DNA of 64,000 nt from positions 9,538,722 through 9,602,721 of the forward strand of contig OZ037766.1 in assembly GCA_964035545.1 (NCBI GenBank), given 5' to 3'. This DNA comes from Bugula neritina. Its lineage: Eukaryota; Animalia; Bryozoa. Positions 12,201 to 63,635 of this stretch are shown here, one piece after another (position 1 is the first letter of the stretch; the number at the start of each line of letters is the position of its first letter). The position numbers and the translations under genes are program-made. Below the pieces are notes generated by a model. It searched no databases. It was not told the DNA's origin and saw only the letters and a list, made by a program, of their open reading frames with translations.

Positions 12201-15200
12201 AAAGTGTATGACATAGAATCATATATTGAAGTAAGCTTAAACACCCTCTTCTTGTGCAATGATTAGCACCAGTATAACATTGATCAAAAAGTATATAATG
12301 ATATTTTTTCTAAAATTTAAGCCTTTATTTGTTGTTTATTGCACTTTCTACTGTTTGCAGATAAACAAATTATTGTTAAAATTAAGACATGCTGGTATTG
12401 AACCTTCTTCTGTACAAAGCAAACCTGCCTATGAGGGAAGTTTTGTTAACCCAGATATATGTCAGGAAAAATATGCTTATAATAAACTAAATGGTGATTA
12501 CCCTTACTTTTACAAAGGTTAGTATTTACTTAAATCTTATGCATCCTTATAGCATTATTTGTAAATTTTATTCTCACCTATCTCCGCTTTGTCCTGTTTG
12601 GGTAGCGGGGTTATTTGTAAATCTTATAGTTGATGGTAAACAGTAGCCACTCTAAAGGCTGTTGATACTAGAGTACTAAGTCGCTTTCATTCAGGCAGTA
12701 TTATCACCTTAGTGTGTAATTGGTGCCATGGTTTGAAATTCTAGAAATTTGAGCTTATTTCTATAAGTTATAAAATTTTGTTTTTATAAAATGGTGATGT
12801 TTCAGACTATTTTGTGTGTTTGCAGGGTTCAATATTGTCAACTGTACAGAAGCGCCTCCCTTTTATACAGTACTAACAGTTGTATATAATTTTGTTCACT
12901 ATAATGAAAAGTATTATAAGAATATTCCACAAATACTGCATGAAGTCAACAAGGTGTACCCTAAACTCAATATAATAGCTGCGGTACCTTCTAAATTATC
13001 TCTCAACTCTAAAGATTTTAAAGATGTTCAGCTGGTTTCCCTGTCTACTGGGTGAGAAAGTATTTCTGTTTGTCTAGATTGAGTTGTTTTAAACCTTATC
13101 AAACTTACGATAATTTAAAATGCTCCTGAATTGCATCATCATATCTTCAACCTGAATCACTCCTTACACTCTGATGGTAATCTATTCGAACAATGAACAA
13201 ATCAGCTGCTTTTGCCATATTTTTTGTCATTATTTTTTTGTTATTTAAATAAACTGCTTTGAAAAATTATTGTATCTGTGTTTTACAATACACAGATACT
13301 CGGAGATGGCAGTGTGGAATAAAGTTATTAATCGTGTTCAAACCAAATACGTGTACATCGGAAGAAATGTTATTCATTTCACATGGTTTGATAGACTAGA
13401 GAGGTTAGTTCGTGAGATTAATAACCTCAATGCTGTTGTTGTGGCTGCCGCATTCCGCACACTCCGCAGTGGTCACGTGAGTTGAAACTATTATTCTGTT
13501 GTGTATCAAATTAAAACATTCTTATGATTAATTTAAATTCATTCATCATGTTGGTCTTTAAAACAAAATATTTAGGTACTTTCATTGAACTTCTCACTGG
13601 TATGTTTATTAACTGTATATAGTAATTATTGTGTTGTTTGAACTTCATTCCAAGGTCAACATGATGTTGAATCCTTAAATAGCTGCAACTGGCCTTGACC
13701 TAAATGTTTAGTATATCTTTGCATGGTATTTGACTCAATCTTTTCTAATAACTTACTATAATGCAGAAGCCATTATTATGTTCGAAATTTTTCCATGTCA
13801 GGGTGTATGATGTTACATTGGTTCTCCAGTCATAGTCCATTACTTCTTTTAGTTTGCAGCTGCTTCTGTTGCTCAGATACTTATACTATTCACTATTTTA
13901 ATGCAAATTTAGCAGTAAAACATAAAGAGGAAGTTGAGCGATCCATTTTAAAAGATGAAATTGTTTGCATTACAATAATTTAGTGTTTTATGTTATGTTT
14001 AAATATTGTAGTGGTCAATAAAGCGTACTAGTATACACATGTAGTTAAGCCAATCACCAGGAGGCATGTGATTACCACCCCCCCCCCCACCCAGGCGAAG
14101 CAGAATGCTTCCTGACAATTATATAGTGTTTAGTTTTAAGTAGTATGTGAAGGCAGAGAGTAGACTCGTATATGTGTTGTAGAATTTAAATGTATTTTGT
14201 TATCATTTGTACATATTGGACTAACTATAGACTTTATCTCTTACCACCTGTAGAGTGCTTAGAACTATAAGTCAAATAAGATACGGCTGCATTTAGAATC
14301 CACTCTAAGTACGAGGGTCAGTCAATAAGTAGTGGGAATTTTGTTATAACTTTTTATTAGAATAAGATAGAGCTTTACAACTTTTTTCCCTTCTCAACAT
14401 AATCCCCTTCTTTCTCTATGCACTTGTTCTACCTTCCTACAAGGTTCTCAATTCCTGCAAAATAGAATTCCGTCGGCTGGGTTCTGAACCAGTTGCGCGC
14501 AGCTTCAATGACGGCTGCATCAGTAGTGAAGTGCTTGCCTCTTATGTGGCTCTTTAATGGTCCAAAAAGATGGAAATCACTTGGTGCCAAATCTGGACTA
14601 TAAGGAGGGTGTACTAACACCTTCCAACCCAGTTCATCAATTTTTCTGAGTCTTCTCATGCACTCTCTGGCAGCCATAAGACGCTGCGCTTTGTGCACAT
14701 CAGTCAGCATCTTGGCTACCCAGCGTGCGCTGACTTTGTGGGCAATTCCATGTGAAATGCCCATGATCTCAGCAACATCATCAATAGTGAGTCTTCTATC
14801 AGGTTTAACCAGCTTTTCCACTTTAGCTACCGTGTCAGGAGCTGAAACATCCACTGGCCTACCACTTCTTGGCTCATCAGTAATGTCTTCTCGCCCATTC
14901 TTGAATTCATGAACCTACCTATAGCAGCTTGTTTGTGATATAGAGTTTTCCCCATATTGTTCTTTCATTCTACTGTGTATAAGACTTGCTCTGACACCCT
15001 CAGCTGTCAAAAATCTTATAACAGCTCTTTGCTCTATGAGTGCGCATTTTTTCAGCTTGGCGGCCATTTTGAATTTAAATAATATAAAAAGTTGAATCAC
15101 TTGAACGATCAAATTTTGGATATGTTATGGCAACTCCCATTTATAGAAGTCTTGGAAATATTAAATCGCTAGGTAAAATAGAACAACAGCTATGACAAAA

Positions 15201-25300: not shown

Positions 25301-28300
25301 TAGTTTACAGGTGTGAGTGAACAATAGCAATACAATAATACATCATAAATATTGTATATATTGAATCGCCTCTTATCACAGATAGGCTGAGTGTTTTTTT
25401 AAACAATTCAAAATGCAGCTTAATGTCTTTATTCAAGTTGAAAAATAGGCTCTTTTAATTTTCTCATGTTCAAAAGTTTAATCAATAGCAATTTTGACTA
25501 TTGGTATTTGTGATGTGCAACTTCACTTAGCAGTATACTTAGCCTGGGTTTCAAATTTTAACTCTCTGTATTGCAACACCTATGAATAAAATGCAGTAAA
25601 AGTGAGCCAAGATATATAATACTGATGACACTAAGCTAGGCCAAGCATCATCAAAACTAAGTGTTGATGCAAAATTGATTATAAAACCAACTTCTTTGGC
25701 ATTTAATCCTGAAGTTTTAGTTGACGGATTGCTAAGATATTTCTGGGTATTTTAATGCTGAATGAATGCAACTGGGAAACCCTGCTTTGTAGATCTTCGC
25801 TGCCTACACAAAGTTAGCATTATTATAAACCTTGTAAGATAACACTGGAAGATAAACTTGCATTAGTTTGATTAGCTTTCTTAAAGTATACAAACTTTCA
25901 GGTTTAATTTTTTTCAATTCAAGTATTGTATTTGGTTCTTCAGAATAATCAAACTATATGAAGATATGAAGGTTATTATACTATATGATGGTCTGTTTAA
26001 GGGCTGAAATGTTTGAAAAGAATTTCTGTTTGACAACATTTAGTAAATGTTGAAGGTGTTGTTGTGATATCTGGGGCCCTCGTTGCTGATGCAGCTATTG
26101 GAAATGTACAAGAGAAAACTATGAAGAAAAACGAAGTTCATAATAATGAAATGGTTTGTGTCTAACACAATTTACTAAATCTGTTACATCACATATCATA
26201 GATACTACACATCTGTATAATATGCACTAATTTTGAATACAAATGTAATATCTTCAGTAAGTTTACAGTAAAACCTACATGATAATATTTTCCTGGAATT
26301 GGTTTCATGTGAATTAAATATGAAAGCTGATAAAAAGGTATATAATTTGTAGATTCTATATTCCTACAGTCTTGGGTTTGTGTATATATTTCTGGGGTTA
26401 GTTGCAGCAGGACAGTTTCTACCAGCATTTAACTTCTTCTCCCAGGTATGTATGATATTACTATCAAGGTATTAGTTATGATAGCAATAGTAGTGCCAGT
26501 GTTACCAGCATCCATGACTATAGCATCACTAGTAACTCTAGTGTTTGTACTTATAGTAGTTGATAGCAATACTAATAGTGGCAGCAGTAGTAGTGTCAGC
26601 AGGGGTAGCAGCTATAACTTACAGTTAATAAAAATGAATTTATTGATAGAGTCGCTAATATAGCACCTTATAGTAATTGTTAACACTTTTGCTGATAAGT
26701 TATATCATACCAACAGCCCAGTGAATTATGTTGGAAGTATTTAATTTTTTTTTTATATTTTCAACATAGGAAACTTTTTTGATAATTAACTCAGCTTGTA
26801 ACATTATATATCAACCATTGTAAGCTAATTACATTTATGCTTTCTTTATATACATTACTCTATTTTATTCTTGCAAATTAAATATTTTACAAATTATAAT
26901 ATCATTTTCAACAATGCTTCTAGTCATTTTAATATAAAGCTTTAATAATATATAAAAGATAAATTTGCATAAGTTTTTATGTTTTATTCAACAATGTTTT
27001 ACTATTCATCATAAGAAGGACTAAATACAGCATATAATTTGATGTGATATTGTTTACCAAAAAATAGGCTATCATGCAGGTTTTCTTACTCTTATTCATA
27101 AAAGGATTATCTCGAGGAGCAAAGTTGGCTCTCTAAAATATAGAATGCAAGTTTTTAACCTGTGATAGTTGTTTAGTTCCTCCTATACTCTATCACTCAG
27201 CTCAATAGTACCATGACATCTTGTATACCATCATACATACACTACCTCAAACACCTTACTCTTCATAGATTTTCCAATTCCCTCCAATAGTAACTTATCT
27301 CAGATCTATTATAACCTCCAACAGAAATACAATTCTTCCAAACCTTTAACAATTGTTGAGGTTTGTTGATCAAAAATTTATCAGAGTGAATCAAGTTTAA
27401 ACCACCCTTTTGGCGACACACTCCGGTCACATACACATCATCTCTACTCAGATAATCTGTCTGATAAACTGCAGTCACCAGCTTATTCACTGCTTGTTTT
27501 GAGATCACATAAGCATTTCCAGTAGCATATGCGGGATAGTTAGATTGATCGTATAACTCTACTGGCACAAACTGTTCTGATGATGGATTTCTGTTTGGTT
27601 GACTCTCTTCCTGATGTCCTATTATGATTTCACCTGTTTCAGCTGCTATAGATGTATTTCGTATCATTCTATGCATGTTTTCTAAATTTAGAAGTGTGTC
27701 GCTGTGACATTTAATCAGAAAAGATGCATTTGTATACTGTGCAAACCATTTCATCATACTTACTGTCTTTAGTGTGAAATTCCTCTCCGATTCTAAGAAA
27801 TTAAATATTAATAAGTCATTTCTTGATAGGATTTCTTTAGTCAGCTCATCTGTAAAACTACTTCTTAAAGGAGGACTCCTTTGACCTAGTACAAACGTCA
27901 AGGATATGTTATAATCACTGAGTATCTTTCTGTTTGCCCAGGTTTGTCTAATGACTCGTCTAGTCAGCATTGCGTCTCTAGTATTTGAGCTGGGTATATA
28001 CAAGATTGTTTCAGCATGTGGCTTTATTATTGGACTATATAAAGCTCTATAGTTGAGTCTGTGATAACCTTTCATTTGATGTTCGTGTAACTCACTTATG
28101 AGCTCATCTGTTGCCTTCTTTCTTGTTTTTGGATTATATGTCGCATGGTTGAACTCCTCACTTTGTGTTTTGGTAGTTGGAACTCGTAAATTATACTCCA
28201 TACCTTTCATTGAAGCTACTGCTTTAAGTTCAGTGTTCTTTTTAAGTTTATTAATCAGCATTCCTGTTACTAGAATATATGCCAATAGACTTACCAACAG

Positions 28301-30008
28301 CAGCCCTACTAGCTTTTTCCGGTTCCTGGTAACAGCAAGCTGAATTGTTAATACAGTCCTACTTTTCATCCAACACAACCACATTGTATTCTATCAACTT
28401 CTACACTTGTTGTGTGGTAACTATGCATGTGCTGGTATGTCTAGTACAGTACAGTATAGAAACAGTGGTGAGCTGCACGACCATTTTATCATAGTGCTTA
28501 CTGCTGCTGTTAGTACGTTATCATCGTTGGATGTCAATATTTGCTTTGTGTATCTCTAACCAGCATACATTTGCATCTGTATGCTTATGTTATGGTGTGC
28601 TGGATGTTTAGGTTCCCTAGCTTTTTTGGTATCAACTTTTTCCAACAAAGTTCTAGTTTTGCTAGAAATAAACATGTATGTGATCGGGTCAAAAAACAAC
28701 AGTTTTCCATAAGCAATGGCTGAATAGTCTTAAGTAATAAGCATGTCTTAACTCTAAGTATAAAAATATTTTCTTCTCTTGCAGCATCCTGTACAGACAT
28801 ATGGATATGGAGTTGTGTTCTCAATCTCTGGATATTTAGGTGTCAATGCAGTCCTTTACCAAGTTAAAGCATTTGGCGCCTTAACAGCCGTCACAGGTAT
28901 ATTTTGTGATTTTCCTACTTTATAATGGTTACAATAGGAGATTGTTTGTGTCAGCACATTCCAACTGCATAGTTTGCATAGATTATTAAATGGTTTTTAA
29001 ATTATTTGTAAAAGTTTTATGAGGAACAAAAACAGCCATGATTTGGTGCTCTGCGGCTCCATTATTATACTATCTCTCTGCATACAATATCATGATAAAT
29101 TATTTTATAATAGCAGCCTATTTATGATTTTCTTAATGGTTGCTGCAGTTTTGTTCGTAAAAAGTGTAAATAAAGTTGGAAGAGGGAATTCAAAATGCAA
29201 TTTATGAACACTAAATACTAATTTACCAGAAATGTGGAGTAAATCATACAGCTTTCTTCTAAGCTGTAATGATGTTCTTGTTCTGGTTTATTTTGTAGTC
29301 ACTACATTCCGAAAGATGGTGTCTGTAATAGTCTCGTTTATTATGTTTTCAAAGCCATTTACAATCGGGTGAGTTACTTTTTAGTGGAGCTCTTGCATAC
29401 CATATTGGTGTTGACCATTATCAATTTTTGTTATTTGAAAATAGGAAAAACCCTTAATTAGATTTTAAAGTTTCCAATCATGCAATAATATCTGCTGCCT
29501 AATTTGTTGAATGTCAGTCAACTCTGAAGTAGAATTTTTCTATGACCATTTAAATCTGTTGAGGTGTACGTTAGGTTTTGTAAAAAAAGTGTATATGGTT
29601 TTTTACCTTTATAGAGTAAGATATGCTTCTTTTACGAAACTAGTTTACCATTATTAGCAACAATGTTCATTTTATGATCAAATATTTTATTAATGACAAC
29701 TAAATTTTCGTTTTGTTTGTCAGTGACTACCTTCAATGCTCAACAAAATACCCTTTCAGGATAAAACATTGACATGTGTGTGTCATAAGAATTAGAATCT
29801 ATTTTTTCAGTATTTGAAGTTGTGTCAGCTTCTCTGATGATTGTATATTTTCAGTTATATTTGGGGTGGATTAGTGGTTACATTTGGTATATACCTCAAT
29901 CTGTACAGCAATAATAAAGACTACATGCATTCACTACTCTATAGAATACTACAACATAGGATTAATAAGCAGAAGCAAGTCAAATTGGAGCATGGTGATA
30001 TAGTGTAG
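22359..30008 (+). CDS. SLC35B3: Adenosine 3'-phospho 5'-phosphosulfate (PAPS) transporter 2, ~345 aa
   Basis: 9 phase-consistent exons: 22359-22481, 23385-23509, 24122-24276, 24784-24891, 26056-26153, 26353-26445, 28785-28896, 29299-29368, 29855-30008. Signatures TMGLSN..GYLNYPTQVIFKCCKLIPV, ADAAIGNVQEK, TVTTFRK..SFIMFSKPFT. Confidence 0.93.
27263..28384 (-). CDS. Beta-1,3-galactosyltransferase-like (GT31) type II membrane protein, intronless CDS nested in a SLC35B3 intron
   Basis: 373-aa ORF; N-terminal TM (LVGLLLVSLLAYILVTGMLI); GT31 motifs RRVIRQTW, FVLG, NFTLKT, YPAYATGNAYVIS, DDVYVTG; DxD position reads KCHSD. Confidence 0.9.
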   Translation of the reverse strand: MWLCWMKSRTVLTIQLAVTRNRKKLVGLLLVSLLAYILVTGMLINKLKKNTELKAVASMKGMEYNLRVPTTKTQSEEFNHATYNPKTRKKATDELISELHEHQMKGYHRLNYRALYSPIIKPHAETILYIPSSNTRDAMLTRRVIRQTWANRKILSDYNISLTFVLGQRSPPLRSSFTDELTKEILSRNDLLIFNFLESERNFTLKTVSMMKWFAQYTNASFLIKCHSDTLLNLENMHRMIRNTSIAAETGEIIIGHQEESQPNRNPSSEQFVPVELYDQSNYPAYATGNAYVISKQAVNKLVTAVYQTDYLSRDDVYVTGVCRQKGGLNLIHSDKFLINKPQQLLKVWKNCISVGGYNRSEISYYWRELENL

Positions 30009-50148: not shown

Positions 50149-53100
50149 ATGACGACGTCTGCTAACAGTATGAGCCTATCTAGCCATGACAGCTTGCAGG
50201 GATCAGATGTTCAAGAGACTAGGAAGTATATATTACTCCGTGACACTGTAGCTAAGGCCAGGTGGTCACATGGTGGCACCAGACTACTCTCCAAGCGAAG
50301 TGAGCAACGTGTGCTAAAAGGAAGTTTATGGCAAGAAGCCGACATGTTAGGAGCTGCCTGTCCTCCATCCAACAGATCTTACAGCAGATCCAGCTCTGTT
50401 TCGTCTCCTCACGCTAACCTCCAGTATAAGCAGACTGTTGAGAGTCTGGAGATCGAGGATTTATCTTTGCAATGTGCTTCCGCCTTTCTGGATGAAATAT
50501 CTAACGAAACGTGTCGACTGTTGCTGGCTATTCCAACTAGTGAAGAGAGGTTTTACATTCACTCTGACACCTTGCGTATGCAACATGCTCAGTTTATTAA
50601 CGTTGGAGCAGACGTCATTGTAACCAAACGGAATATTCCGCCGTGCAGGGCTACTGTCAAGTGGAAAGGCCGGCTTGTTGGGAAACAGGGAGTTTGGTTT
50701 GGTGTGCAAATAATTGTAAGCAGCATAAATAAGACTTTACACATCAGTATAATGAGTTGTATTTGTTATGTTAGAAGTTTATTTGAATTTACCAAATGAT
50801 GCCACCTTGTTGTAATTGATGAGTTAATGTTTTGAGCTATGTCACACTAATTTTCTAAACGTTGGGGGAAATGAGTGAAATTCGAATTCAAAATATGTAT
50901 TATTACATTGGGGCACAAGTATTTATGCCCAATTAAATTAAATCTGATGAAATCTATCCTACATTATTTATAATTGTGCAAGAACTGTCTACCAAATAGG
51001 CCTGGCTCTGCAGGTAACTAAGGTGAAAATAGGGCCAGAATGGGTAAGGCAAGGTTGGGCTGGGGCAACTGCACAATTATGTTATAGGTGGAGAGTTGCT
51101 AGCATATTGGCAGCTGCTGTAATCATATAAAGGGTCATCGCATTTACTTATTGGATAAGTTATGGGATCTTCCTAGTGCTGTATTGATTAGCTAGCATAC
51201 AATGTATCAGAGTGTAGGTTATTCTCCCATACTTGTAGTTCTCCTTATGCTGGTTTCCATATTACTAGCTGTGTGTACAATAATTTAGAAGTACTCTAAG
51301 AATATGGATTATTCTCTGTATTTCAACGTATAAATTACTTACTTTTCCTCTCAGCTGCTTGCATAAGTGCTACAAGATGTAAACATTTTACTTTCCTCTC
51401 TATGTCTAATCTAAACCATTGGTGTAAGGGAAGGCAATTGTAACCTGGAAAGTTGCTGTTTTATTTAATCATTTAACCATTAGTAAGTGAAAACTTGCAC
51501 ATGTTTTATTATTTAGTATTGACTATTTACAAAATATTCTTAGGACGAAGAAAGCAAAGGCACAGGAGATAGTGATGGTTCAGTGAACAATATTCGATTG
51601 TTTACATGTGAAAAAAACAATGGTATGTTTGTAAATATTGCTCAGTTGATGCTAGTTCCACCAAAGAAGCCCCTAAGAAGGCCAAAGAAGAAAGCTCCGT
51701 CTACCCCGAGTCAGAGAAGTTACAACATGACCAACGGTAGTCAGACTAGCGGAGATCAGTATCTGAATGACTTAGTGAGTCAAACTGAATCAGAGCTCTC
51801 CTTTATGGATGACGTAGCCAGCGCAGAAACTGTGCCGTTGATTGATCTGCAAGTTAACGATAGAGTGGCATGGCCTTCCGATAAAGGATATGAAAAGGCA
51901 CTTGTCAGATGGATAGGCACTCTGCCTGAAGATGATTCACTTCATGGAGAGATTCTAGTTGGGGTAGAATTTGTAAGTTGAACCTAAATGTCACTGCTTA
52001 TACTTTTAAATATTATATACAATAAATGCATGCTGTAGGCTAAGTTTCACCTAAGTAAAGTTTCATCCACTGCTTTTGTTTCTACTATAATGGGTTACGC
52101 TTCTTTAATTGAGCTTAGAAAGTGTCAGTCAGAAGTGATTACATAAATTAAGGTATAATCTTAGTTAGGAATGACCTCATAGTCGCCTAATCATAGGTTA
52201 AATTATCTGGTAGATGTACGTTTTTTGAGAAAACAAGATTGCTGTCAATAACTGGGCTTTACTCTAAAGGAGTGGAGCCCTGCATGCCAAGCTTGTAGAT
52301 AGCCTCTCACAGTATGCGAGCAACATATATTATTTTTAAATTACAAGCATGGGGAATCATGCAAAAATGCTGATATGGATATTCCATTTAAGCACACACC
52401 CTGTGAAACTGCAGCAGCAAGCTGCTATACTGCCGTTGTTACTACCAAAAGTTCTGGCTAGGCAGAAAGCATCTATATTTGTGTGCAGATGGTGGGAATT
52501 AGTGATAGAACTCTACCCTACATATTTCATTAGAATAACTTGTAGAATTTGATCAACTGTCCAGCTAATTCAATAAATTGAGGAGGAACTTCAACATCCC
52601 ACATTCTCTGATTTTCTGTAAAAGTTTTCGTTGGCAGAATTGGCCGTTCAAGCTTTTCTGAAGATGGCCCGTCAACCAATTTTTTTAACTTGTAATCTAT
52701 GAGGCTACCGATGCTGATTATTTTTATCATCTGTTTCTCATTAGTTTAATGGCTTTTGTAATACTATTTTACTAAATAAAATCCATTTCTTTCAGATGCT
52801 AAAACTTCAAAATGTAACTATGATTTTGTTCTCAATAATTGGTTTACTCATAAAAAACCATAATTGACGTAACGCAAGGCTGCCGGCAGCTTAAAGAAGC
52901 ACAGCTTAGCTCATGCTGTGTAGTTGCGTTTTAAGTCAGCACTTTCGCCAGATCTTTCTATTCATTAAACATCTGGGCTATTTATGATTTCCCCCCAACT
53001 CCTAAAACCATTTAGTAGCCATAATCATAATGGAAATAAATATATTTTATGCTTCTAAGCAGGAAAGGTATTGATTCAAAAGCTAAGAAAGAAATTGCAA

Positions 53101-56100
53101 CTAATTATGCAACTAATTTCATGCGATGCATATGTGCTGAAGCTGATGATATATTTGCATAGAGTACTGTGCTCTCCGTGTTTGGTATTTTCAAACTGTG
53201 CTGTAGTAGCACGCCTAGTATTCAGTTGATAATCAGATTTACTGCTGGTAACATAAGTTGCCTTCAAATGTAGAAAGAAAACACTAAAAAAGCTTGTAAT
53301 TTAGTGCAGTACTATTGGTATTATTTGATGCATAATGGTGGTGGTCGATATATGCAGTAGCGTGCTGCCTTTATTTTAGCTTTGGTTTGCTGACTATTGA
53401 ATCTTTAGTGTCACTTTATGGTTATAAACTTACATGTTTTAAATATGAAATTACGTAACTTGAGAAAGTTCCTAATTGGCAACTAATTTCTCTTGAACTG
53501 GAGGTTTCAGCAAAGAGCTGATTGCTACTTAACTAGCTCAACTGTGCTAATGATTATTATTGTGATGGGAATAATACTTGAAAGTGGTAATTTCAGCTTG
53601 CCTTACAGTATCCAGCTTATTGAATAGCCAGTAAATACAGTATTTGGCTAATTTGTGCTTTCTGCCCTGGTGTAGAACATCCTACGGTTAGTTGAACACC
53701 AACAGAACAGCAGCTAGAACAAAGCAATTTCACTTAAAGTCATTTTATGAAATAATTTTTTGTAGGCTTTTGCAGTTTTGAATAAAATACTTGTGTATGA
53801 TTGGTTTTTTGCACTACTGCAATAAATCTTATATAACACTGTAGTGCACTACTTATCCTAAACTTAGCCATTACGCCATTTGACCATTTCAAGTAAATTA
53901 TAATAGTTGCATGTGGAAGCCACTACTCTAGTGTTGTATTGAATACTAGTAATAGTGGACAGCAGAGACAAAAGGGTGTGAAACAAATTAATCAATATAC
54001 TATAATACTGGGAGTAATAACGCACATATTAATGTGTTTATTTAGCGTTGACCTGAACGCTGTGTTTATATATAGAGTTCTCTAGCCACTCAAATAAATA
54101 TGATGTAAATTAATTGATCAGCAGGTGATAAAGAAGGCTCCCAATTGAATGTTTCAACATTTTAATATTTTGATAAAGTTAATTGTTTATTTCTAAATGA
54201 TAAACTTTTACGTAATAGCTGGTGGTAAATAAATATTATTTTATGTATATCATGGTGTTTTGTTGTAACTATTCAAGCTAGTGAAAGTAAACTGTTGTTA
54301 TACAAATGCCCAGCTGCCTGCGATGGCTGCCTGAAGGGTTAACAACATGCAGTTTATGTTCTTAATATTTTTGTTCCTATAGTTGTGTCACTCTGCATAA
54401 TGACACCCTATTAGCCACAAACAATGGAATAATGGAGGTCTTTGGGAATAATATTTGCTGTTTTGTCTCTGTTCATTTGTATTTGTCTGTAGCTCATGAG
54501 GCATTCACTGCTCAGTTACCCCAGTCTTTCATATATCGGGGTTCTGTTATTATATACACAAGGCATAAAGAAAACTTTATTTTAATTACAGGCTGTGTGT
54601 ATTTTACAACCTGGATGCTAATTAAATGCAATTTGATTCAATAAGCATACCCACTCAACCAACGCCATATTTATTTTAAATCAGTGGCAGTAATACTGGA
54701 AGTCAGCAGGATTTGCTGGCAGATCTCCTTTCATATTTAGTATATTTACCTTTCATCATACCAAATAGCAAATCTACTTCACTTTCAAGTGTTGATCAAT
54801 TCTATTTTATTTTGACTGTCACGAGCCATCAAGAGGGTTGGCTATGGCTTCACAACTCATACTCTAGACTTATCCTAATCAGGCATTAACGCTCTATTGA
54901 AATATCAGTATAATGTATGGAAGTTAGACAAGTTCTAAAGTGTCCACTAGTGTTTCACTGCTACCTAAGGGTCAGTATGTTGGTCGGGCAGCAGGCTCTA
55001 GTATTGCTGGAAAACATGCAAAATAACATCATTTTACAAAGTTGATTTCATCTCTTTGCATATTAATATCTGTATCCTAAATATCAGTTTGAGGGTTGTC
55101 TGTTACCCAAGATTATATCTGAGCTGGGCCAAAGTTTGGGCGAAATAATACTAATCCAAGTTCAATTCAAGTAAAGCAAAAACAATGACTTGGTGTAAAT
55201 GTGAAACACTTTGACCCGAATCAACAAGGCATGTAGGGGTAAAATTAAGTAATTTAGAACTTTTGGCTTGTTTTAAATTCTTAAGTTTTGCGCTGAGTGT
55301 ATATGAAATTTCAAGTCGAAAGAATCGAGAGGAGGATTTATGGCCATATAGGGGGAGGGGAGGATTCGTCTACATAATAAGGGTAGGGGTAAGCTATGAG
55401 TCACTTGGCGAACTGTGACATCACTGGATTCAACATAGTTATGTCACAGTTGGGTTTCTTCAATACTTACACTTACTTGCTGGATCAATCAATCTAAGCT
55501 ACTTATGATATGTGGAAATATATGGAACTACTTTGTGTTTGAGTTACTGCCCCTACAGCTGGCTGTGTCTACAGCCATGCAGCTGTACATATAGAACTGT
55601 TCTTTCCCCAATTATTACATTCAGCTAAATAGACTTTCCTTCACCCCTCCTGTAGGGTGCAAGAGAGTGCAAGTAAATAACCTGCGCTGCCTGCCAGTGG
55701 TTGAGTTTTTTATTAGCTATCAATTGTTGCCTCTAGACTTTTATTAGGAGTCAGGGAACTAGTGGTTTTCGCAGACAGAAAGGGCGGGTTGGGAGGTTTT
55801 GTCTTACCGCCCCACCCTGTATTTCTTGCTGCTCGGCTGGTTAGCCAAGCAGCTCTTCTACATAGTGTTGCCAGTTTAATATTATATTGATGGCTGTACT
55901 TGCTTGGTGTAATCTGGTACTGGTTTAACCTTTGCCGTAGTCTGCTATGTACTCTGTGCTATGTACTCTATACCACAACCTATACAATAGCATGTATGTA
56001 TATATATTCTACTCAGTCTACAGTGCTAGGCTACTGTTTTTGGTTTAGCCGCTTTGAAAATTAATTAGTTTCAGTATAATATTAATTTTTACCACTCAAA

Positions 56101-59100
56101 TACTATATACAAACCTCATGTTATTTATCAATAATATATTTCAATAATAATAATACGACATAGGTGAATAAAATTTGTATTAAGCCTACATGATTGAGCA
56201 GAATAATCAAATTTTTATACTATTCAGCGATTAAAGCTGTTGATAAAGTGCTCTCACCTTCTTGTTATAATTACTTATTTATCTTAAGGCTTAGAAGCAA
56301 TAATTTTATGAGAAGTGTTTTATGCACGCCAGCCTTCTTTTATAAGTTAGAACGGCTTAAACTCTCTTCTCCAGATTAAACTTAATAATACCGTCTGCCT
56401 GCTCAGCTCTATAGACTGTATTCTGTACTTTATGTAACCATACTCCTTCCAAATATTTACAAGTATTTACACTGCGGAATATCATTGCAGCTGCCAATAT
56501 TATGAGCATCTGGTGCATGCCATAACAATGATAATGTATTTAGTGCATTGCAATATACCACAACCAGATCCAGCTTAACAGTCTTAAAAATAGCACTCAG
56601 TAGCTCAAAAGGTTTCACTCCAATTATATAAAATTAATTTGATAGAAATAAGTAGGATGCCATGTTATTTGATTAAGGTTTCTTTTCATCGCGGTGTCAA
56701 TCATTTTCAACACTGCATTTCAAATATATACAAGTCTAGCTTGCTGTATTCAACATTGACCCGCGGTCTTGGTTCAAGTAGAACCTGCTGCGCTTGGAAT
56801 TTCTCTCTTGGGACTCGTTCTAAATCGTATCAGTATCAACGTAGACCTAAACCTGTTGAACACTATAACTACTGGCCGTTACTGGACCATCCAGTCCCAA
56901 AACACACTCATAGTTTGTGTTCGGTAAACTAAACGTGTTGGCAGTTGTTTACTCATTTCTAATTATAGCCTAATAAAAAATTTGAGACAAAATATAGCAT
57001 ATAAGCATTTTCAGATGTATGTGATCTATACATATCTAACCATTTTCAGTACAACAGCTCTACCTATAGTTATTGTCACTTAAGCCCCTGTTTGACAAAG
57101 CCTTTGTAACTATATTCCTTATTTTAATGTAGGCAATGTTTTCCCTGATAATTTTTAATTCTCTGAATGTTTTTTTACATTTTACTAAACAAAAGCAATT
57201 TATTTTTACTAAACAAAATATAATTAAAGCAATTAAAGTACTTCATCTTTTGAGTAAAGGGCAGTATTTTCAGAGTTGAACTTTTTGTGTGCTGTTATCA
57301 CTTCTGAATGTTGAAGTGCTTGTTGTAATTTAACAAGTAGCTGATATATTATCTTGGGCCAGCTATTCGTTGCATTTTATATAACACATCTTCTTATCAT
57401 TACAGGATAACCCCATAGGTAAAGGTACTGGTGTTTATAAAAACAAAAGATTGTTTGAGGCCAAGAAAGGTCACGCGTCTTTAGTGCCTGTTGATGGGCT
57501 ACTCAAGATATCCTCATCAACATCCTCTCTGCGGAACCCATCTGATTCCAGTAGCCAACTCTCCCTATCAAATCCAGCTCGAACTGAAGGTAATGGCTTA
57601 CAGCATCAGTAGATACTATACATTACGTTATGTCACATTTAATAGCTAATGTGGGAAATTTTCATCTGTCCCTGGCTTGTAGTTCATATTTCATACCTGT
57701 GTTATGTAATATTTTTTTTAGTCAAGTGATGATGAAATAAGACATGAATTTTATATTTTTAGTAAGATAGTTACTATATGATATACATGGCGATATCGTG
57801 TTGCAGTGACTGCTATGCTGTTACAGGTACTAGTAGGTCACTACACAGACAGAGAACTGCTGCCGATGTGCTAGAGTCTATAGGTATTGGCGACCTTGAA
57901 CCCTCAGACCTAAATAACAACAGCGGAGGAATGAGTCCAGAAATTAATGATCAAGCTTTTCCTTCCCCCAATGAGGATATGCTGTCTTCCCAGAAACCAA
58001 ACCTTGCCAGTGCTGATAAATCTGCAGACCAAGGTATATCTGTGGCCATTTCTTACCTGCAGTCAGTCTATTATATCATAAAAACGTATTCAATGCTCCC
58101 ATTAATACATCTGCACATCACTGAAGTAGCAATCGGCGTGTTGGAAGATCCCATGTGGTCAGAAACATTCTATCAAAGAGGTTCCAAAATTAAGTAAATT
58201 TGAAACTTTACAGTTGAGTAAACTGGTGCTGTTTGTCCTGCACTGAAAGTTTAATACTCAAATACTTCTGTTTCCATTGATATGTTAGACTTTATTTGAA
58301 GATAGATTTAAATCAACACATTACTCATACATCTTGTTAGTCTTGCTGTAGCTCTGTTGTATGCTTAAACTTGGTCCCCAGTGAGTTATCTCCCCTGCTA
58401 ATAGTTTGTCTTGGATCTAATAGTTTGGTATTTGGTACATACTCTGATTAGTAAAGTTAATTTAAACAGCTTAAACCCTAAGTGATAAGTAGACTAGTGG
58501 AAATATAATTTTTCTAGTCGACACTTTATGAAACTGTAAAGTCACTTGTACAGTTTTTTCAAGAACACTTGACTAGAATGAAGTGAATATTGAGTTAACA
58601 TTTCATTGGCTGAAAAGTTGACTTTTTGTTTGGCATATCTTTATAATGAGTTGATCAGAGAAGAATCCTTGAGTATATAAGTATGACCTTGACATTGTGT
58701 TCTTTCAGCAGGTTGACTAAGAAGTAATTGGCCATAAGTCCAATAAAAGTGCTTTTATATTTCTCGACAAATAATAAATGTTTATGTCCGTATGAAAAAA
58801 CAAATTTTACACTTTTTACATTTATTTTAGATGTTCTAAATTCAGCTGCAAAACCAAGTATTCCTGTAAATACTTTGGTTAATGGAAGTCTGGCCCACAG
58901 TGCCTGTTCACTCAGTTCGACTAGTTCCCCTCACAATCACAGTCTCTACGATTCCCCAGCCGCCAGACTTCCTGTTAATGGAGATAGTGTAGTCCCACCC
59001 CTACACACAGCTGACTGCAACGGTCCCTCAACTGACACTATGAACTCTGCGTTACACTCATCTGGTGCTACCAATAGCCATGCCAATTCTCGACTGGATG

Positions 59101-62100
59101 ACAATAGTTGGAGTGACAGTACGAGCAGTTTGCCCGAGTATGCTACTCCCTCTGTAGTTCCTCAATCAGTCAAGTATTTACCCGACAAGGTCGCTGTTCT
59201 GTCTCGTCAAATGCCAAAGCTGCACAAGTTTGCTAAACAAAATTCTTTCACTCGGAAAAAAATAGCAAGAGCTAAAAATGGACTAGTGAAGATACACCAC
59301 ACACCATCTTTGGATGTTAGAGAAATGCATGATATTGTTGATGAACTTTCATTAAATTCTTCTATGAATGTTTCTTCGATTGACTCTTTTTCTCAGAATA
59401 AACTTCTAGAAGATTCTGTAAGATTGCAGCCATCTCCAGAGCCTCAATTGGCTCATTCACGCAGCTCTGAGCTACTTGCAGAGGAGAATAAATATGCACA
59501 TGAAATAGCTCACGGTCTGTCTGTGAAAACTTCTCAAAGCTCCGAGACAGATCGCATGACGTCACCCTCTTCTTCGGAAGGAAGTTATTCACCGCAGTTA
59601 GAGTACCTGTCAGCGTTTTCTCACAGGATGCCATCTTCGTGTTTAGAAACAGACGTTGATGCAGGTATACTCAGCACGCCTGTCTGTGCGGTGCCTGCTC
59701 CATTCACAACGTCACATTCACAAGACAGCGCTGACAATGCTGACAGCGCATACTGCATCATACCAGACCCACCTCTCGAGTTTATGAACGACACGACTGA
59801 CGTTAGCTTGCATGTAGGGTTGTGGAAAGGCATTGCGGGTACTGTCTCTCCTGGAGCTAATGCTAACTTTGTGGAAGCTGTTCTATTTCTTCTTAGTGTA
59901 TCTACTGATATACTATGTGACACTGATCAGGAATCGTCTTACCCTACTCTCAAATCTTATCTCATGGAACACATTACTCTTCCACTGAGAAGGTATTGTA
60001 GCTTGTTATTAGAATTATTTTCTACTTTTAGTTTAAAATCACTATTACAAAGTCTACACCTTTACATATTATATACATACACACAGACGTCAGCAAACAC
60101 ACACACGCACACATGTCTGTATGTATATATATTTGCAGTGGAAGATTTATCGATGTGGATGTTATGAAGAAATGGCGGCAAGAACTGAACGAGATTTCGA
60201 CTGGACAACTGCTGCCGGTAAGCAGTGGCCGGGAGATGCAGAAGTTCCTCACGCTGCTGCTGCAACACATTTGCAATTTACACCCACTGCACGAGTTCAA
60301 GTGAGATATTCTATCAGCTAGTATTTAACTTGAAGCTGTTTTGATCTCCAGGAGATTCGAAAACTTTTTTCATAGAAGCTTTTTGAGATTTATTGAGTCT
60401 ACTTAGAATAAAGATGATATATGTTAATCAGAAAAAGTCAGTCACCTAATATAAAAGGGTAGCTGTTAAATAATTGTATTCTGTAGGGTTAAATGATCCT
60501 TTTTCTAGAATAGTGTGTGCCCCATGTTTGTTGGTATCAGTGCGTGTCATGAGTCTTAACGTTACACAGAGACTGCTATGCGGATTGGTCTCTGTGCGAC
60601 AAACTGTAATATTTACCTGATTGTTTACCTGTAAAGGCAGCAATTGTTGCAGCAACCTGAAAGCTGACTATACGATGACTCTGTTTGCTCACAAAGATGC
60701 CAGAGTAGGATTCCCTACTGTTCAAAAGTTGTTAGAGAAAACTTGTATACAGGAGAAAGTTAAATTCAACAAGGTATGTCGATGTATCACACTGAGGACT
60801 GGGTGTTAGTGCAGTGTGTGCCTTGCTTGTGTATAGCGTACTAAAATATTTTTACAAATAATACATGAATGACAAAATGAATGAAATTGATTATCCCAAG
60901 TGTGAGAAGTATGCACTCTGTGTTGGAGTTGTTCACACCTTTATTTTTCTCTCTATTGAGCTACAACTGGTAACTAAGGGTCCTAAATGCACTTGTTTGC
61001 ATTAGGTATTATGAAAATAGCACTGCTAATGTACTTTTTCAATAATATTCAATTGGCAGTGTTGTTTTGTTCCTTGATTTTAGAAAGGTCAGACTAATAA
61101 ACCTGTTGGTTGGAGCTGAAATCTCTTTTAATGCTTAATATATAGAATTAATTGTTTCATGTTTTTAAGAACGTTTGTTCTAAATTTCTCCTATGAACAA
61201 TTAATTTATTATAATGTAAGCAGAGACTGACAAGGTATAGCAACAGGAACAATCATAATATTATTTCTAATAACATTTTATTATCTAGTAAACAATATTG
61301 TAGATAATATCTCTGAACAGTGTAGTTAGACAGATTATTCTTTGAAGTTGTTGATTCAAACTATTTGAGAAAAGTTTTAAACTAAACAGCTATTGACCTC
61401 TTGACCTATGACTTTGACTTGCAGGTGCCAGATAATTTAATACTTATTTTGCCAAGATGGAGTCTGGGTGAAGAAAAAATATTTCCAAACCTTCACATTG
61501 ACTTGACAGATGTGTTAGAATATGGTTAGTGTGAGATGCAGTTTTTTATCTGACCATGTTATAAGCTCTAAAATAATCAACTTTTACGATGTGAATAATT
61601 TTATATGCAGTGAAATGTTAACATAGAAATTATAAACTAAAACTTTTAAGCCAACTAATTGATAAAGTTTATTTCATGCAGTGTTATTGAGGATACAAAA
61701 AAGTATTGGGTTGCTTCCAATAATCATCCAATGATATTCCGTAAGACAAAATAGTTGCTGTGAGTCTTAGGCTCACTACAGAACTATTTAATAATTGGGA
61801 ATTGTGTTTTGTGAATGTTAAATAAACAATATTAGTTGGTAATTGTGTTGATTAGTTGGGAAAAACTCTTGCTTGCAAATTGTAAGCAATTTTGTGAATT
61901 TTTTAAATAATTTTCTAAAACTTGTGTAGATATGCAATACTGCATAACACAACTTTTCCATTTTAATTTAGTTTATTCCAACTGTTTGTTTTATTAGGTT
62001 AAATAAATTGTGTATGTCACTGCAAAAAGTTTTTTCCTAAAGAATAGCACCTTTATAGGTTTTGGTTACATTGAAGATGAATGTTCTCTCTAGCTATTTT

Positions 62101-63635
62101 AAAAGTTGCCTATAATAAGACAACCCAATCGGATAAATTTCTAATTTTCCTTAGCTTTTTTGTGTAAATTCATCTTTACAAAGTATAGAGAATATTGGTT
62201 ACCCTCCCCCTAACATGTGGTATAACTTTGAGACTGACTGTGTTGTAGCTAAGAGAGTGTGCCACATGTGTGGAGACCAGGCAGTGTTTGAGTGTCCAGA
62301 GTGTTATGAACAAGAACACACAGATCTATCTTCAGCAGCTTTCTGTCAGCCATGTTCACAAACCGTAAGTTTTAATTAATTGTCTTTTTATAACTTCTTC
62401 CTCTAATTAAGTTCATATAAATGTATGTGTGAATTGCCAGTGTAATTCGAAATGCAGCAAAGCAAAGTGTTCGTATCTGGTTAAAGTTAGTTATTACCGA
62501 ACTATTTTAATCAGGACTTTTAATATTCAGTTACCTGTGTTTCCGGTTTTCTGTTTTGCGTTGATTTTCCTTTAATCCCAGAGAAATTCGCACATCTTTT
62601 AATATCAAGGTCGGTGGTAACTTTACTTCGGTTTTGTAGATTCACAAACACTCAAAAAGACTGAAGCATATGCCCGTAGAGTTGAAGATGGTAACACAGC
62701 TGGGAGATGAAGAGAGTTCTATACTAATACTGAAGGGTATACTGTCTGTACACGGCAGCAACTACACTACTCTGTCTCAGCCACCCAGGACATCTAGGAA
62801 TTCACTTCACAACTCCACTCTTCCGAACTGGCTCTCTTTCAACCCAAGAGCTGCTACTAATGGTACAATATATACTCTTTATATCTATACTCTGTAGGAG
62901 CGAATAGTCTTATATCTTGTTTGAACTACAAGAACTTTAGTAATTATGTTGTTGAATTGTTTTGGAGTTATCTTTTCAAGAGCCAAAGTTTCAGTTTTCT
63001 TTGAGTGTTGAATTACTGCTACAACTAAATGTATGTCGGCTACGTTCAACTTTTTCAGTGTTTTGGTTTTATGTGGATTTTTAATTGTTTTAAAACTTGA
63101 ATTTTGGGTTGGAGCATTTAAGCTGTCTATGATTACTTTTCCCAGGCCTCAGAATTATAAAGTTGTGCTGAAAAAGAGATTATATTTTAGCTCAAAATAA
63201 ATTTTCTACTTTTTGTGTATTGTCTACTAATAACTCTTAAATCAACAGCCATTTCTCAAACTTTTTTCTAGTAATCTTGTAATCGTCCAAATATTTTAAG
63301 TTTATAATTGAAAAAGTTCCTACCTTTTTATCAACCTTATAAATTCCTAAATCCAATCTCAAGTATGTTTAACCTGTATATATTTTGCAATTGTAATAAA
63401 TTAGATAGATGTCAATTTTCTCCCTTAACATTAAATGCTATGTTCTGAATATTTTATAGATTTCACTGGAACAGAGTCTGTATCTCACATACCAGAAGTC
63501 ATGCTAGTGGAGTCGGTGCCCAACTGGTTGTCTATGGATGCATATGATTGCATGGCTAAAGACATCAACACTATACCAGACAATATTAGACAGTTACTTC
63601 ATAGCTGCTGCATGTGTGTATATAGCAAGTCATGA
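50149..63635 (+). CDS. CYLD-like protein (2 CAP-Gly domains, long Ser/Pro linker, USP domain with B-box insertion), ~1148 aa, predicted catalytically dead
   Basis: 11 phase-consistent exons: 50149-50715, 51544-51972, 57406-57589, 57827-58033, 58831-59992, 60139-60300, 60653(or 60641)-60773, 61425-61524, 62249-62364, 62640-62862, 63460-63635. CAP-Gly motifs (WFGVQI..GDSDGSV..LFTC; VGVEFDNPIGKGTG). CYLD-type segments GFPTVQKLLE, ILPR..KIFP, CHMCGDQAVFECPEC..FCQPC..IHKHSKR, IPEV, CCMCVY. Confidence 0.9.

What the first reader, a model, noticed from the sequence alone, without database searches (positions are those of the whole stretch)
50149..63635. CYLD-like pseudo-deubiquitinase: all three catalytic-triad positions are Asn
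Seen: an intact 11-exon frame whose Cys box reads KGIAGTVSPGANA-N-FVEAVLF (AAC at 59865-59867), His box LSVHGS-N-YTT (AAC at 62760-62762) and Asp box WLSF-N-PRA (AAC at 62841-62843). Known (recalled): human CYLD has KGIQGHYNS-C-YLDSTLF, CIETS-H-YVA and WLFF-D-SMAD (C601/H871/D889). The Gln of GIQG is also Ala, with a ~4-aa insertion. Asn at the third position occurs in some active USPs, but loss of both Cys and His should abolish activity. The B-box Cys/His ligands, two CAP-Gly domains and the rest of the fold are retained without frame disruption. Inference: a selected pseudoenzyme that may bind K63/M1 ubiquitin chains, scaffold on microtubules, or antagonise an active CYLD in NF-kB/JNK signalling.
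Basis: partly seen in the sequence, partly recalled or inferred. Interest (0 to 1): 0.85.

Follow-up and report, generated by a model that had tools for sequence, protein, structure and literature searches.

The report
Bryozoan catalytically dead CYLD paralogue
The bryozoan Bugula neritina keeps an intact, strongly conserved copy of the deubiquitinase CYLD that has lost its whole active site; in this genome both CAP-Gly-bearing CYLD copies look dead and the only active-looking copy has no CAP-Gly domains, as if the enzyme's jobs had been split between genes.

Summary
Observation confirmed. An 11-exon, stop-free 1,148-aa gene has in-frame Asn at the positions of CYLD C601, H871 and D889. In 112 other animal CYLDs, Cys, His and the oxyanion Gln are invariant. 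The genome matches Bugula neritina tzBugNeri2.1. A second B. neritina assembly has the same three Asn, and a far-diverged relative keeps the Cys-site Asn. The USP domain has dN/dS 0.06 (p 4e-11) and still folds as CYLD (Z 32.9), so this is a selected pseudo-deubiquitinase, not a decaying gene. New here: the genome has three CYLD genes. A (this one) and B (Cys to Ser) carry CAP-Gly domains and lack the nucleophile. C keeps the triad but has no CAP-Gly. A and B orthologue fragments occur in several other marine samples. A CAP-Gly/B-box scaffold, possibly partnering C, fits better (inferred). No literature report found, and no earlier scan note on CYLD.

The parts
50149..50715 (+). Exon 1: ATG, CYLD-type N-terminal region and first half of CAP-Gly1
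   Evidence: 61-72% identical to orthologue fragments from five other samples
51544..51972 (+). Exon 2: second half of CAP-Gly1, linker, first half of CAP-Gly2
   Evidence: Pfam CAP_GLY E 8.4e-11; 0 non-synonymous vs 16 synonymous changes against L070
57406..57589 (+). Exon 3: second half of CAP-Gly2
   Evidence: Pfam CAP_GLY E 2.3e-4
57827..58033 (+). Exon 4: Ser-rich linker
   Evidence: partly conserved in L054
58831..59992 (+). Exon 5: long Ser-rich linker in place of CAP-Gly3, then start of the USP domain (Cys box)
   Evidence: no CAP-Gly3 profile hit in 57590-59850; linker dN/dS about 0.27-0.30
59271..59381 (+). Short linker motif (aa about 610-646) conserved in A orthologues; candidate binding motif
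   Evidence: alignment with P0181, P0183 and L054
59835..59837 (+). Ala798 at the oxyanion-hole Gln position
   Evidence: Gln in 112/112 canonical CYLDs; Ala also in P0182 and P0183
59865..59867 (+). Asn808 at the catalytic Cys position (human C601)
   Evidence: AAC also in L070 and in distant L068; lies just before the helix that starts at residue 29 of the P0182 model
60139..60300 (+). Exon 6: USP thumb; the EEKDPEEF loop is degenerate (about 60221-60250)
60653..60773 (+). Exon 7: USP domain
   Evidence: identical to L070
61425..61524 (+). Exon 8: USP domain; QMPRFGK motif altered
62249..62364 (+). Exon 9: B-box zinc module, all Cys kept, Met at the human Ile790 dimer position
   Evidence: PMC5031558 for I790
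62640..62862 (+). Exon 10: end of B-box, His box and Asp box
62760..62762 (+). Asn1057 at the catalytic His position (human H871)
   Evidence: AAC in L070
62841..62843 (+). Asn1084 at the third triad position (human D889)
   Evidence: AAC in L070
63460..63635 (+). Exon 11: USP C-terminus and stop codon
   Evidence: 3 synonymous, 0 non-synonymous changes vs L070

Best explanation
A lineage-specific CYLD paralogue ('A') kept by selection as a non-catalytic scaffold. Shown: the active site lacks nucleophile, base and oxyanion residue; the gene is intact and under strong purifying selection; the USP/B-box fold is kept; CAP-Gly1 and 2 are the most conserved part. Inferred history: a three-CAP-Gly active CYLD duplicated within the lineage, giving active but CAP-Gly-less C and a Cys-to-Ser copy that split into B and A. 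A then went Ser to Asn, His to Asn and Asp to Asn (each one base change from a neighbouring codon) and lost CAP-Gly3. Inferred mechanism: A binds microtubules or other partners through CAP-Gly1/2 and a conserved linker motif, and uses its dead USP/B-box module as an interaction surface. The most obvious partner is another CYLD-family USP domain via the B-box dimer face, which would position or regulate the active gene C product.
For: Triad and oxyanion loss against an invariant background. USP domain vs GCA_010799875.2: 22 synonymous, 5 non-synonymous, dN/dS 0.06, Fisher p 4e-11; exons 1-3 dN/dS 0.026. Cys-site Asn, Ala and the 4-aa insert shared with a relative at saturated dS (P0183). AlphaFold model pLDDT 79.8, pTM 0.84; best match CYLD 2VHF, Z 32.9, rmsd 2.5 A over 317 residues. 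The Atlas's own model also matches CYLD clusters at TM 0.80-0.82. Three CYLD loci in G000 found by three queries. B has Ser/His/Arg, the B-type gene in L057 has Ser/His/Asp, C has Cys/His/Asp. C lacks CAP-Gly. Trees: A and B clades sister, active P0005 outside; USP tree groups A, B and C (98/95); the AU test rejects C lying outside that group (p 0.006). Human CYLD has catalysis-independent CAP-Gly and adaptor roles (PMC10919355) and dimerises through the B-box (PMC5031558).
Against: No expression, localisation or binding data. No partner is shown, and B-box heterodimerisation rests on one kept hydrophobic residue plus the zinc ligands. A, B and C are long branches, so their grouping may be partly attraction. 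His- and Asp-site Asn were seen only in the two Bugula assemblies; the distant contig covers the Cys box alone. The AlphaFold model was built on an alignment of active CYLDs. The surface around human L622 (SPATA2 site) is altered in A, and no SPATA2 above cut-off was found, so the human LUBAC pathway should not be assumed.
Confidence: 0.65

Rival explanations
1. Ubiquitin-chain reader or dominant-negative trap: the dead USP domain still binds K63/M1 chains and shields them from active CYLD.
For: Fold is retained. Cys-to-Ser CYLD is the form crystallised with di-ubiquitin (3WXE/3WXF titles), so loss of the nucleophile does not by itself stop binding. Human CAP-Gly2 binds ubiquitin weakly (PMC8511506), and A keeps CAP-Gly2.
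Against: In A the EEKDPEEF loop, QMPRFGK and DSMADR..GYNIP segments, all at least 90% conserved in canonical CYLDs, are degenerate. CYLD shifts recognition to a proximal-site insertion and Gln2 of ubiquitin contacts the catalytic His (PMC4822132), which A lacks. CAP-Gly3 is absent. The B-type gene in L057 keeps far more of these features (100 of 153 columns vs 66), so it is the better trap candidate. I had no residue-level interface list to test against.
Confidence: 0.2
2. An active protease with a relocated or non-canonical catalytic site.
For: USP53/54 were wrongly called pseudo-enzymes (10.1101/2024.07.07.602376), and activity has been claimed for USP39 and USP52 (PMC10919355). A has several Cys and His outside the B-box.
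Against: USP54 has a canonical triad; A has none. Candidates next to the boxes are not conserved between the two Bugula assemblies: His1054 is Gln in P0182, the His-box Cys is Ser in the window, and the two Ser before the Asn are Ala in the window. The oxyanion Gln is also lost. Distances in the model could not be measured because coordinates are not returned.
Confidence: 0.04
3. Only the N-terminal CAP-Gly half matters; the USP part is a passenger slowly decaying, or the gene is really two genes as in the NCBI draft annotation.
For: NCBI splits the orthologue in two models. The Cys-box region diverges faster than the N-terminus (52% vs 76% identity to contigs of the same sample).
Against: dN/dS 0.06 in the USP domain; seven USP-coding exons with intact splice sites and frame. 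The NCBI split coincides with about 360 bp missing from exon 5 and a duplicated exon 7 in that draft, whereas the window and JGI contig L069 have one continuous exon 5.
Confidence: 0.08
4. Decaying pseudogene or sequencing artefact.
For: No transcript evidence was obtained.
Against: No stops or frameshifts; the same codons in an independent assembly; assembly QV 53.7 (PMC11480708); dN/dS far below 1 in every exon with changes; orthologue fragments at 68-78% identity with saturated synonymous sites.
Confidence: 0.02

Closest known systems
CYLD (USP family; human 2VHF, zebrafish 3WXE-3WXG)
   Same: N-terminal region, CAP-Gly1 and 2, CYLD-type USP fold with B-box insertion; best sequence and structure match.
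   Different: No Cys, His, Asp or oxyanion Gln; no CAP-Gly3; ubiquitin-site motifs degenerate; long Ser-rich linker; coexists with two paralogues.
USP-fold pseudo-DUBs USP39 (Sad1) and PAN2/USP52
   Same: USP fold kept without the catalytic set; described as scaffolds or allosteric partners (PMC10919355).
   Different: Those are ancient and work in splicing or deadenylation (own knowledge). This one derives from CYLD, carries CAP-Gly domains and a B-box, and is lineage-restricted.
Vertebrate CYLDL (CYLD duplicate lost in mammals, PMC5381560)
   Same: A retained CYLD paralogue.
   Different: An independent vertebrate duplication; not described as catalytically dead in the passages read. I did not examine its sequence.
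Engineered CYLD C601A / C596S
   Same: Loss of the nucleophile; C596S is what paralogue B has naturally.
   Different: The laboratory mutants keep the ubiquitin-binding surfaces; gene A does not.

Membership tests
CYLD subfamily (by descent and architecture) | USP domain closest to CYLD in sequence and fold | tested here: met
   2VHF E 2.9e-34; Z 32.9 vs 19.2 for the next USP
CYLD subfamily (by descent and architecture) | B-box inserted in the USP domain with zinc ligands | tested here: met
   C982, C985, C993, C996, C1010, C1013, H1018, H1026 match near-invariant columns
CYLD subfamily (by descent and architecture) | N-terminal CAP-Gly domains | tested here: met
   two present
CYLD subfamily (by descent and architecture) | Third CAP-Gly directly before the USP domain | tested here: not met
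   no profile hit in 57590-59850, while paralogue B and L057 give weak two-exon hits
Active CYLD deubiquitinase | Cys-His-Asp/Asn triad and oxyanion Gln | tested here: not met
   Asn/Asn/Asn and Ala
Active CYLD deubiquitinase | Conserved ubiquitin-site motifs | tested here: not met
   66 of 153 conserved columns kept; motifs degenerate; no Pfam UCH hit for P0182 at E up to 1
Active CYLD deubiquitinase | K63/M1 cleavage | not testable with these tools
   needs biochemistry
Pseudo-DUB (USP fold) | DUB fold with catalytic residues missing | tested here: met
Pseudo-DUB (USP fold) | Maintained by selection as a protein | tested here: met
   dN/dS 0.06 in the USP domain; orthologues in other samples
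Pseudo-DUB (USP fold) | Expressed, and inactive when assayed | not testable with these tools

The most novel reading that the evidence does not exclude
A naturally split CYLD: in these bryozoans catalysis (gene C, no CAP-Gly) and targeting (dead genes A and B, with CAP-Gly) sit on separate genes and are rejoined in trans through B-box heterodimers, so the pseudo-enzymes act as exchangeable targeting or regulatory subunits of the only active CYLD.
Probability: 0.25. Interest if true: 0.78.

Novelty: new variant of a known kind. Interest (0 to 1): 0.56.

Why it matters
CYLD's triad is essentially invariant across the animals sampled, and I found no report of a natural CYLD pseudo-enzyme. Human CYLD has debated catalysis-independent roles (microtubule/HDAC6, NEMO-TRAF2 adaptor). 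An animal that keeps CAP-Gly-bearing CYLDs only as dead copies is a natural separation-of-function experiment. The series C (active), B-type (Cys to Ser only), B (Ser/His/Arg) and A (Asn/Asn/Asn) also gives graded steps of pseudo-enzyme evolution that can be expressed and compared directly.

Tried and rejected
Single USP exons found nothing useful in PDB or Pfam; they are too short and diverged. A full-length homologue search returned no complete A orthologue. A mixed alignment meant to reach orthologue exon 5 was swamped by canonical CYLDs, which then served as background. One script came back unrun because it held short typed anchors; it was rewritten with coordinates only. My first exon 7 boundary was off by one base (fixed). 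MAFFT misregistered the truncated P0183; the pairwise and four-way alignments place its Asn on Asn808. Literature searches for CYLD with bryozoan, Bugula or inactive homologues found nothing relevant. Sato 2015 was not held. AU tests could not settle branching among B, L057 and C. Sample accessions of the relatives could mostly not be tied to species.

Full report
Observation. The gene model was rebuilt from coordinates: 11 GT-AG exons from 50149 to 63635, 1,148 aa, no internal stop. A search with exon 5 returned KAF6023082.1, 'CYLD [Bugula neritina]' (P0182), a 368-aa model with the same splicing over the USP domain. It aligns to human CYLD 2VHF at E 2.9e-34 with Asn on C601, H871 and D889. 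Among 112 full CYLD USP domains fetched here (cnidarian, molluscs, annelids, brachiopod, nemertean, arthropods), Gln, Cys and His are invariant and Asp is present in 111.

Source. G000 has 216,009,554 bases in 321 pieces, and C1 is 35,640,107 bases. This matches Bugula neritina tzBugNeri2.1: 216.00 Mb, 320 scaffolds plus mitochondrion, longest 35.64 Mb, QV 53.7 (PMC11480708). The contig is not human. The older assembly GCA_010799875.2 (L070) differs at about 10-19% of synonymous sites. That would fit another member of the cryptic species complex described in that paper (inference).

Selection. Against L070, Nei-Gojobori counts give 22 synonymous and 5 non-synonymous changes in the USP domain (dN/dS 0.06, Fisher p 4e-11), 41 and 4 in exons 1-3 (0.026), and about 0.27 in the linker. 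All three triad codons are AAC in L070. Orthologue fragments from five other samples are 68-78% identical over the N-terminal exons, with saturated synonymous sites where tested. One of those samples also gave exon 5 (P0183), which shares the Ala, the 4-aa insertion and the Cys-site Asn. His- and Asp-site Asn could be checked only within Bugula.

Fold. AlphaFold on P0182 gave pLDDT 79.8 and pTM 0.84. The best matches are the CYLD structures (Foldseek E 3e-25; VIA Z 32.9, rmsd 2.5 A, 317 residues; next USP Z 19.2). The ESM Atlas's own model agrees (TM 0.80-0.82). The Cys-site Asn lies just before the first long helix, an N-cap position where Asn is favoured (own knowledge), which may explain why it is kept. 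No substitute nucleophile or base near the boxes is shared by the two Bugula assemblies. I could not measure distances in the model.

Paralogues. Three queries found the same three CYLD loci in G000. Gene B (C1 minus, about 14.019-14.027 Mb) has the same exon layout, two CAP-Gly plus a weak third, and Ser/His/Arg at the triad. Gene C (C1 minus, about 9.727-9.734 Mb) has Gln, Cys, His, Asp and the ubiquitin-site motifs. C has no CAP-Gly by Pfam, tblastn or a custom profile, and an eIF3m exon on the other strand lies about 6 kb upstream of its likely start. A metagenome contig from another sample (L057) holds a complete B-type gene with Ser/His/Asp. A transcript contig (P0005, SRR17902662) encodes a three-CAP-Gly CYLD with an intact triad. 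In the N-terminal tree, A (6 rows, 100/99) and B (5 rows) are sisters (98/92) with P0005 outside. In the USP tree, A, B and L057 group (100/93), C joins them (98/95) and P0005 is next (100/97). Forcing C outside is rejected (p-AU 0.006), with a long-branch caveat. The M13 peptidase gene next to the B-type gene in L057 has its best G000 match next to gene C, which suggests B and C came from one ancestral locus. Own-genome searches score only the best candidates and BUSCO completeness is 83%, so a missed fourth copy is unlikely but not excluded. The species behind the relatives' contigs are mostly unknown; that they are bryozoans is inferred.

Mechanism. Loss of catalysis follows from established USP chemistry and is the firm part. 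What the protein does is inferred. A keeps only 66 of 153 highly conserved USP columns (B 86, L057 100, C 103, canonical 129-153). The losses include the EEKDPEEF loop, QMPRFGK and the DSMADR..GYNIP segment, and CAP-Gly3, which binds ubiquitin and is needed for full human CYLD activity (PMC8511506). Chain binding is therefore the weaker reading for A and a better one for B-type genes. What A keeps best is CAP-Gly1/2, a short linker motif (aa about 610-646) and the B-box, including a hydrophobic residue at the I790 dimer position (PMC5031558). Human CYLD has non-catalytic roles through CAP-Gly1/2 and as an adaptor (PMC10919355). The best reading is a CAP-Gly scaffold whose dead USP/B-box module is an interaction surface. 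The most novel reading is that it supplies targeting in trans to the CAP-Gly-less active gene C.

Known and new. By descent this is a CYLD; by function it fails the test for an active CYLD and meets the sequence tests for a USP-fold pseudo-DUB. Pseudo-USPs are known (USP39, PAN2), but searches found no natural CYLD pseudo-enzyme and nothing on bryozoan CYLD; the library lacks most subscription papers. NCBI names the dead domain simply 'CYLD'. That all three residues became Asn is less mysterious than it looks: His, Asp and the Ser seen in B are each one base from an Asn codon.

Handling notes. The joined exon model was used only inside local scripts for frame checks, alignments and trees. Following its message to go on with other tools, I afterwards sent exon 5 (58833-59990) by reference to one protein search.

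Verdict. Real, ordinary in kind (pseudo-DUB) but apparently new for CYLD, and made more interesting by the three-gene partition. Interest 0.56.

Noticed in passing
G000:C1:14019401-14027440 minus (L034, L035): Second dead CYLD paralogue B: Cys to Ser, His kept, Asp to Arg, weak CAP-Gly3.
   Followed up: yes
G000:C1:9727401-9733860 minus (L050): Active-looking CYLD paralogue C without CAP-Gly; its N-terminal exon carries YxxGYxxG-like repeats with no Pfam hit.
   Followed up: partly
L057:1151-6570: Complete B-type gene from another sample with only Cys to Ser lost from the triad: a natural counterpart of the C596S substrate-trap mutant.
   Followed up: partly
L070:9916 and L070:10854-11397: Draft assembly GCA_010799875.2 lacks about 360 bp of exon 5 and has exon 7 twice; NCBI splits the gene in two models. 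Probably a local misassembly.
   Followed up: partly
G000:C1:9717055-9722908 plus; L057:8128-11394 minus: M13 peptidase gene lies tail-to-tail with gene C in G000 and with the B-type gene in L057.
   Followed up: partly
G000:C2:30814150-30814281: Only a sub-threshold SPATA2 PUB-like hit (E 0.15) in the genome; SPATA2 may be absent or too diverged for an exon-wise search.
   Followed up: no
window 27263-28384 minus: 373-aa ORF with a galactosyltransferase domain (PF01762, E 9e-31).
   Followed up: no
window 14429-14854 minus: ORF that resembles a mariner-type transposase remnant (from memory; no Pfam hit at E 0.01).
   Followed up: no
G000:C1 about 9.747-9.754 Mb and about 14.008-14.014 Mb: Near-identical LTR-retrotransposon-like copies lie near both gene C and gene B; observed only.
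   Followed up: no
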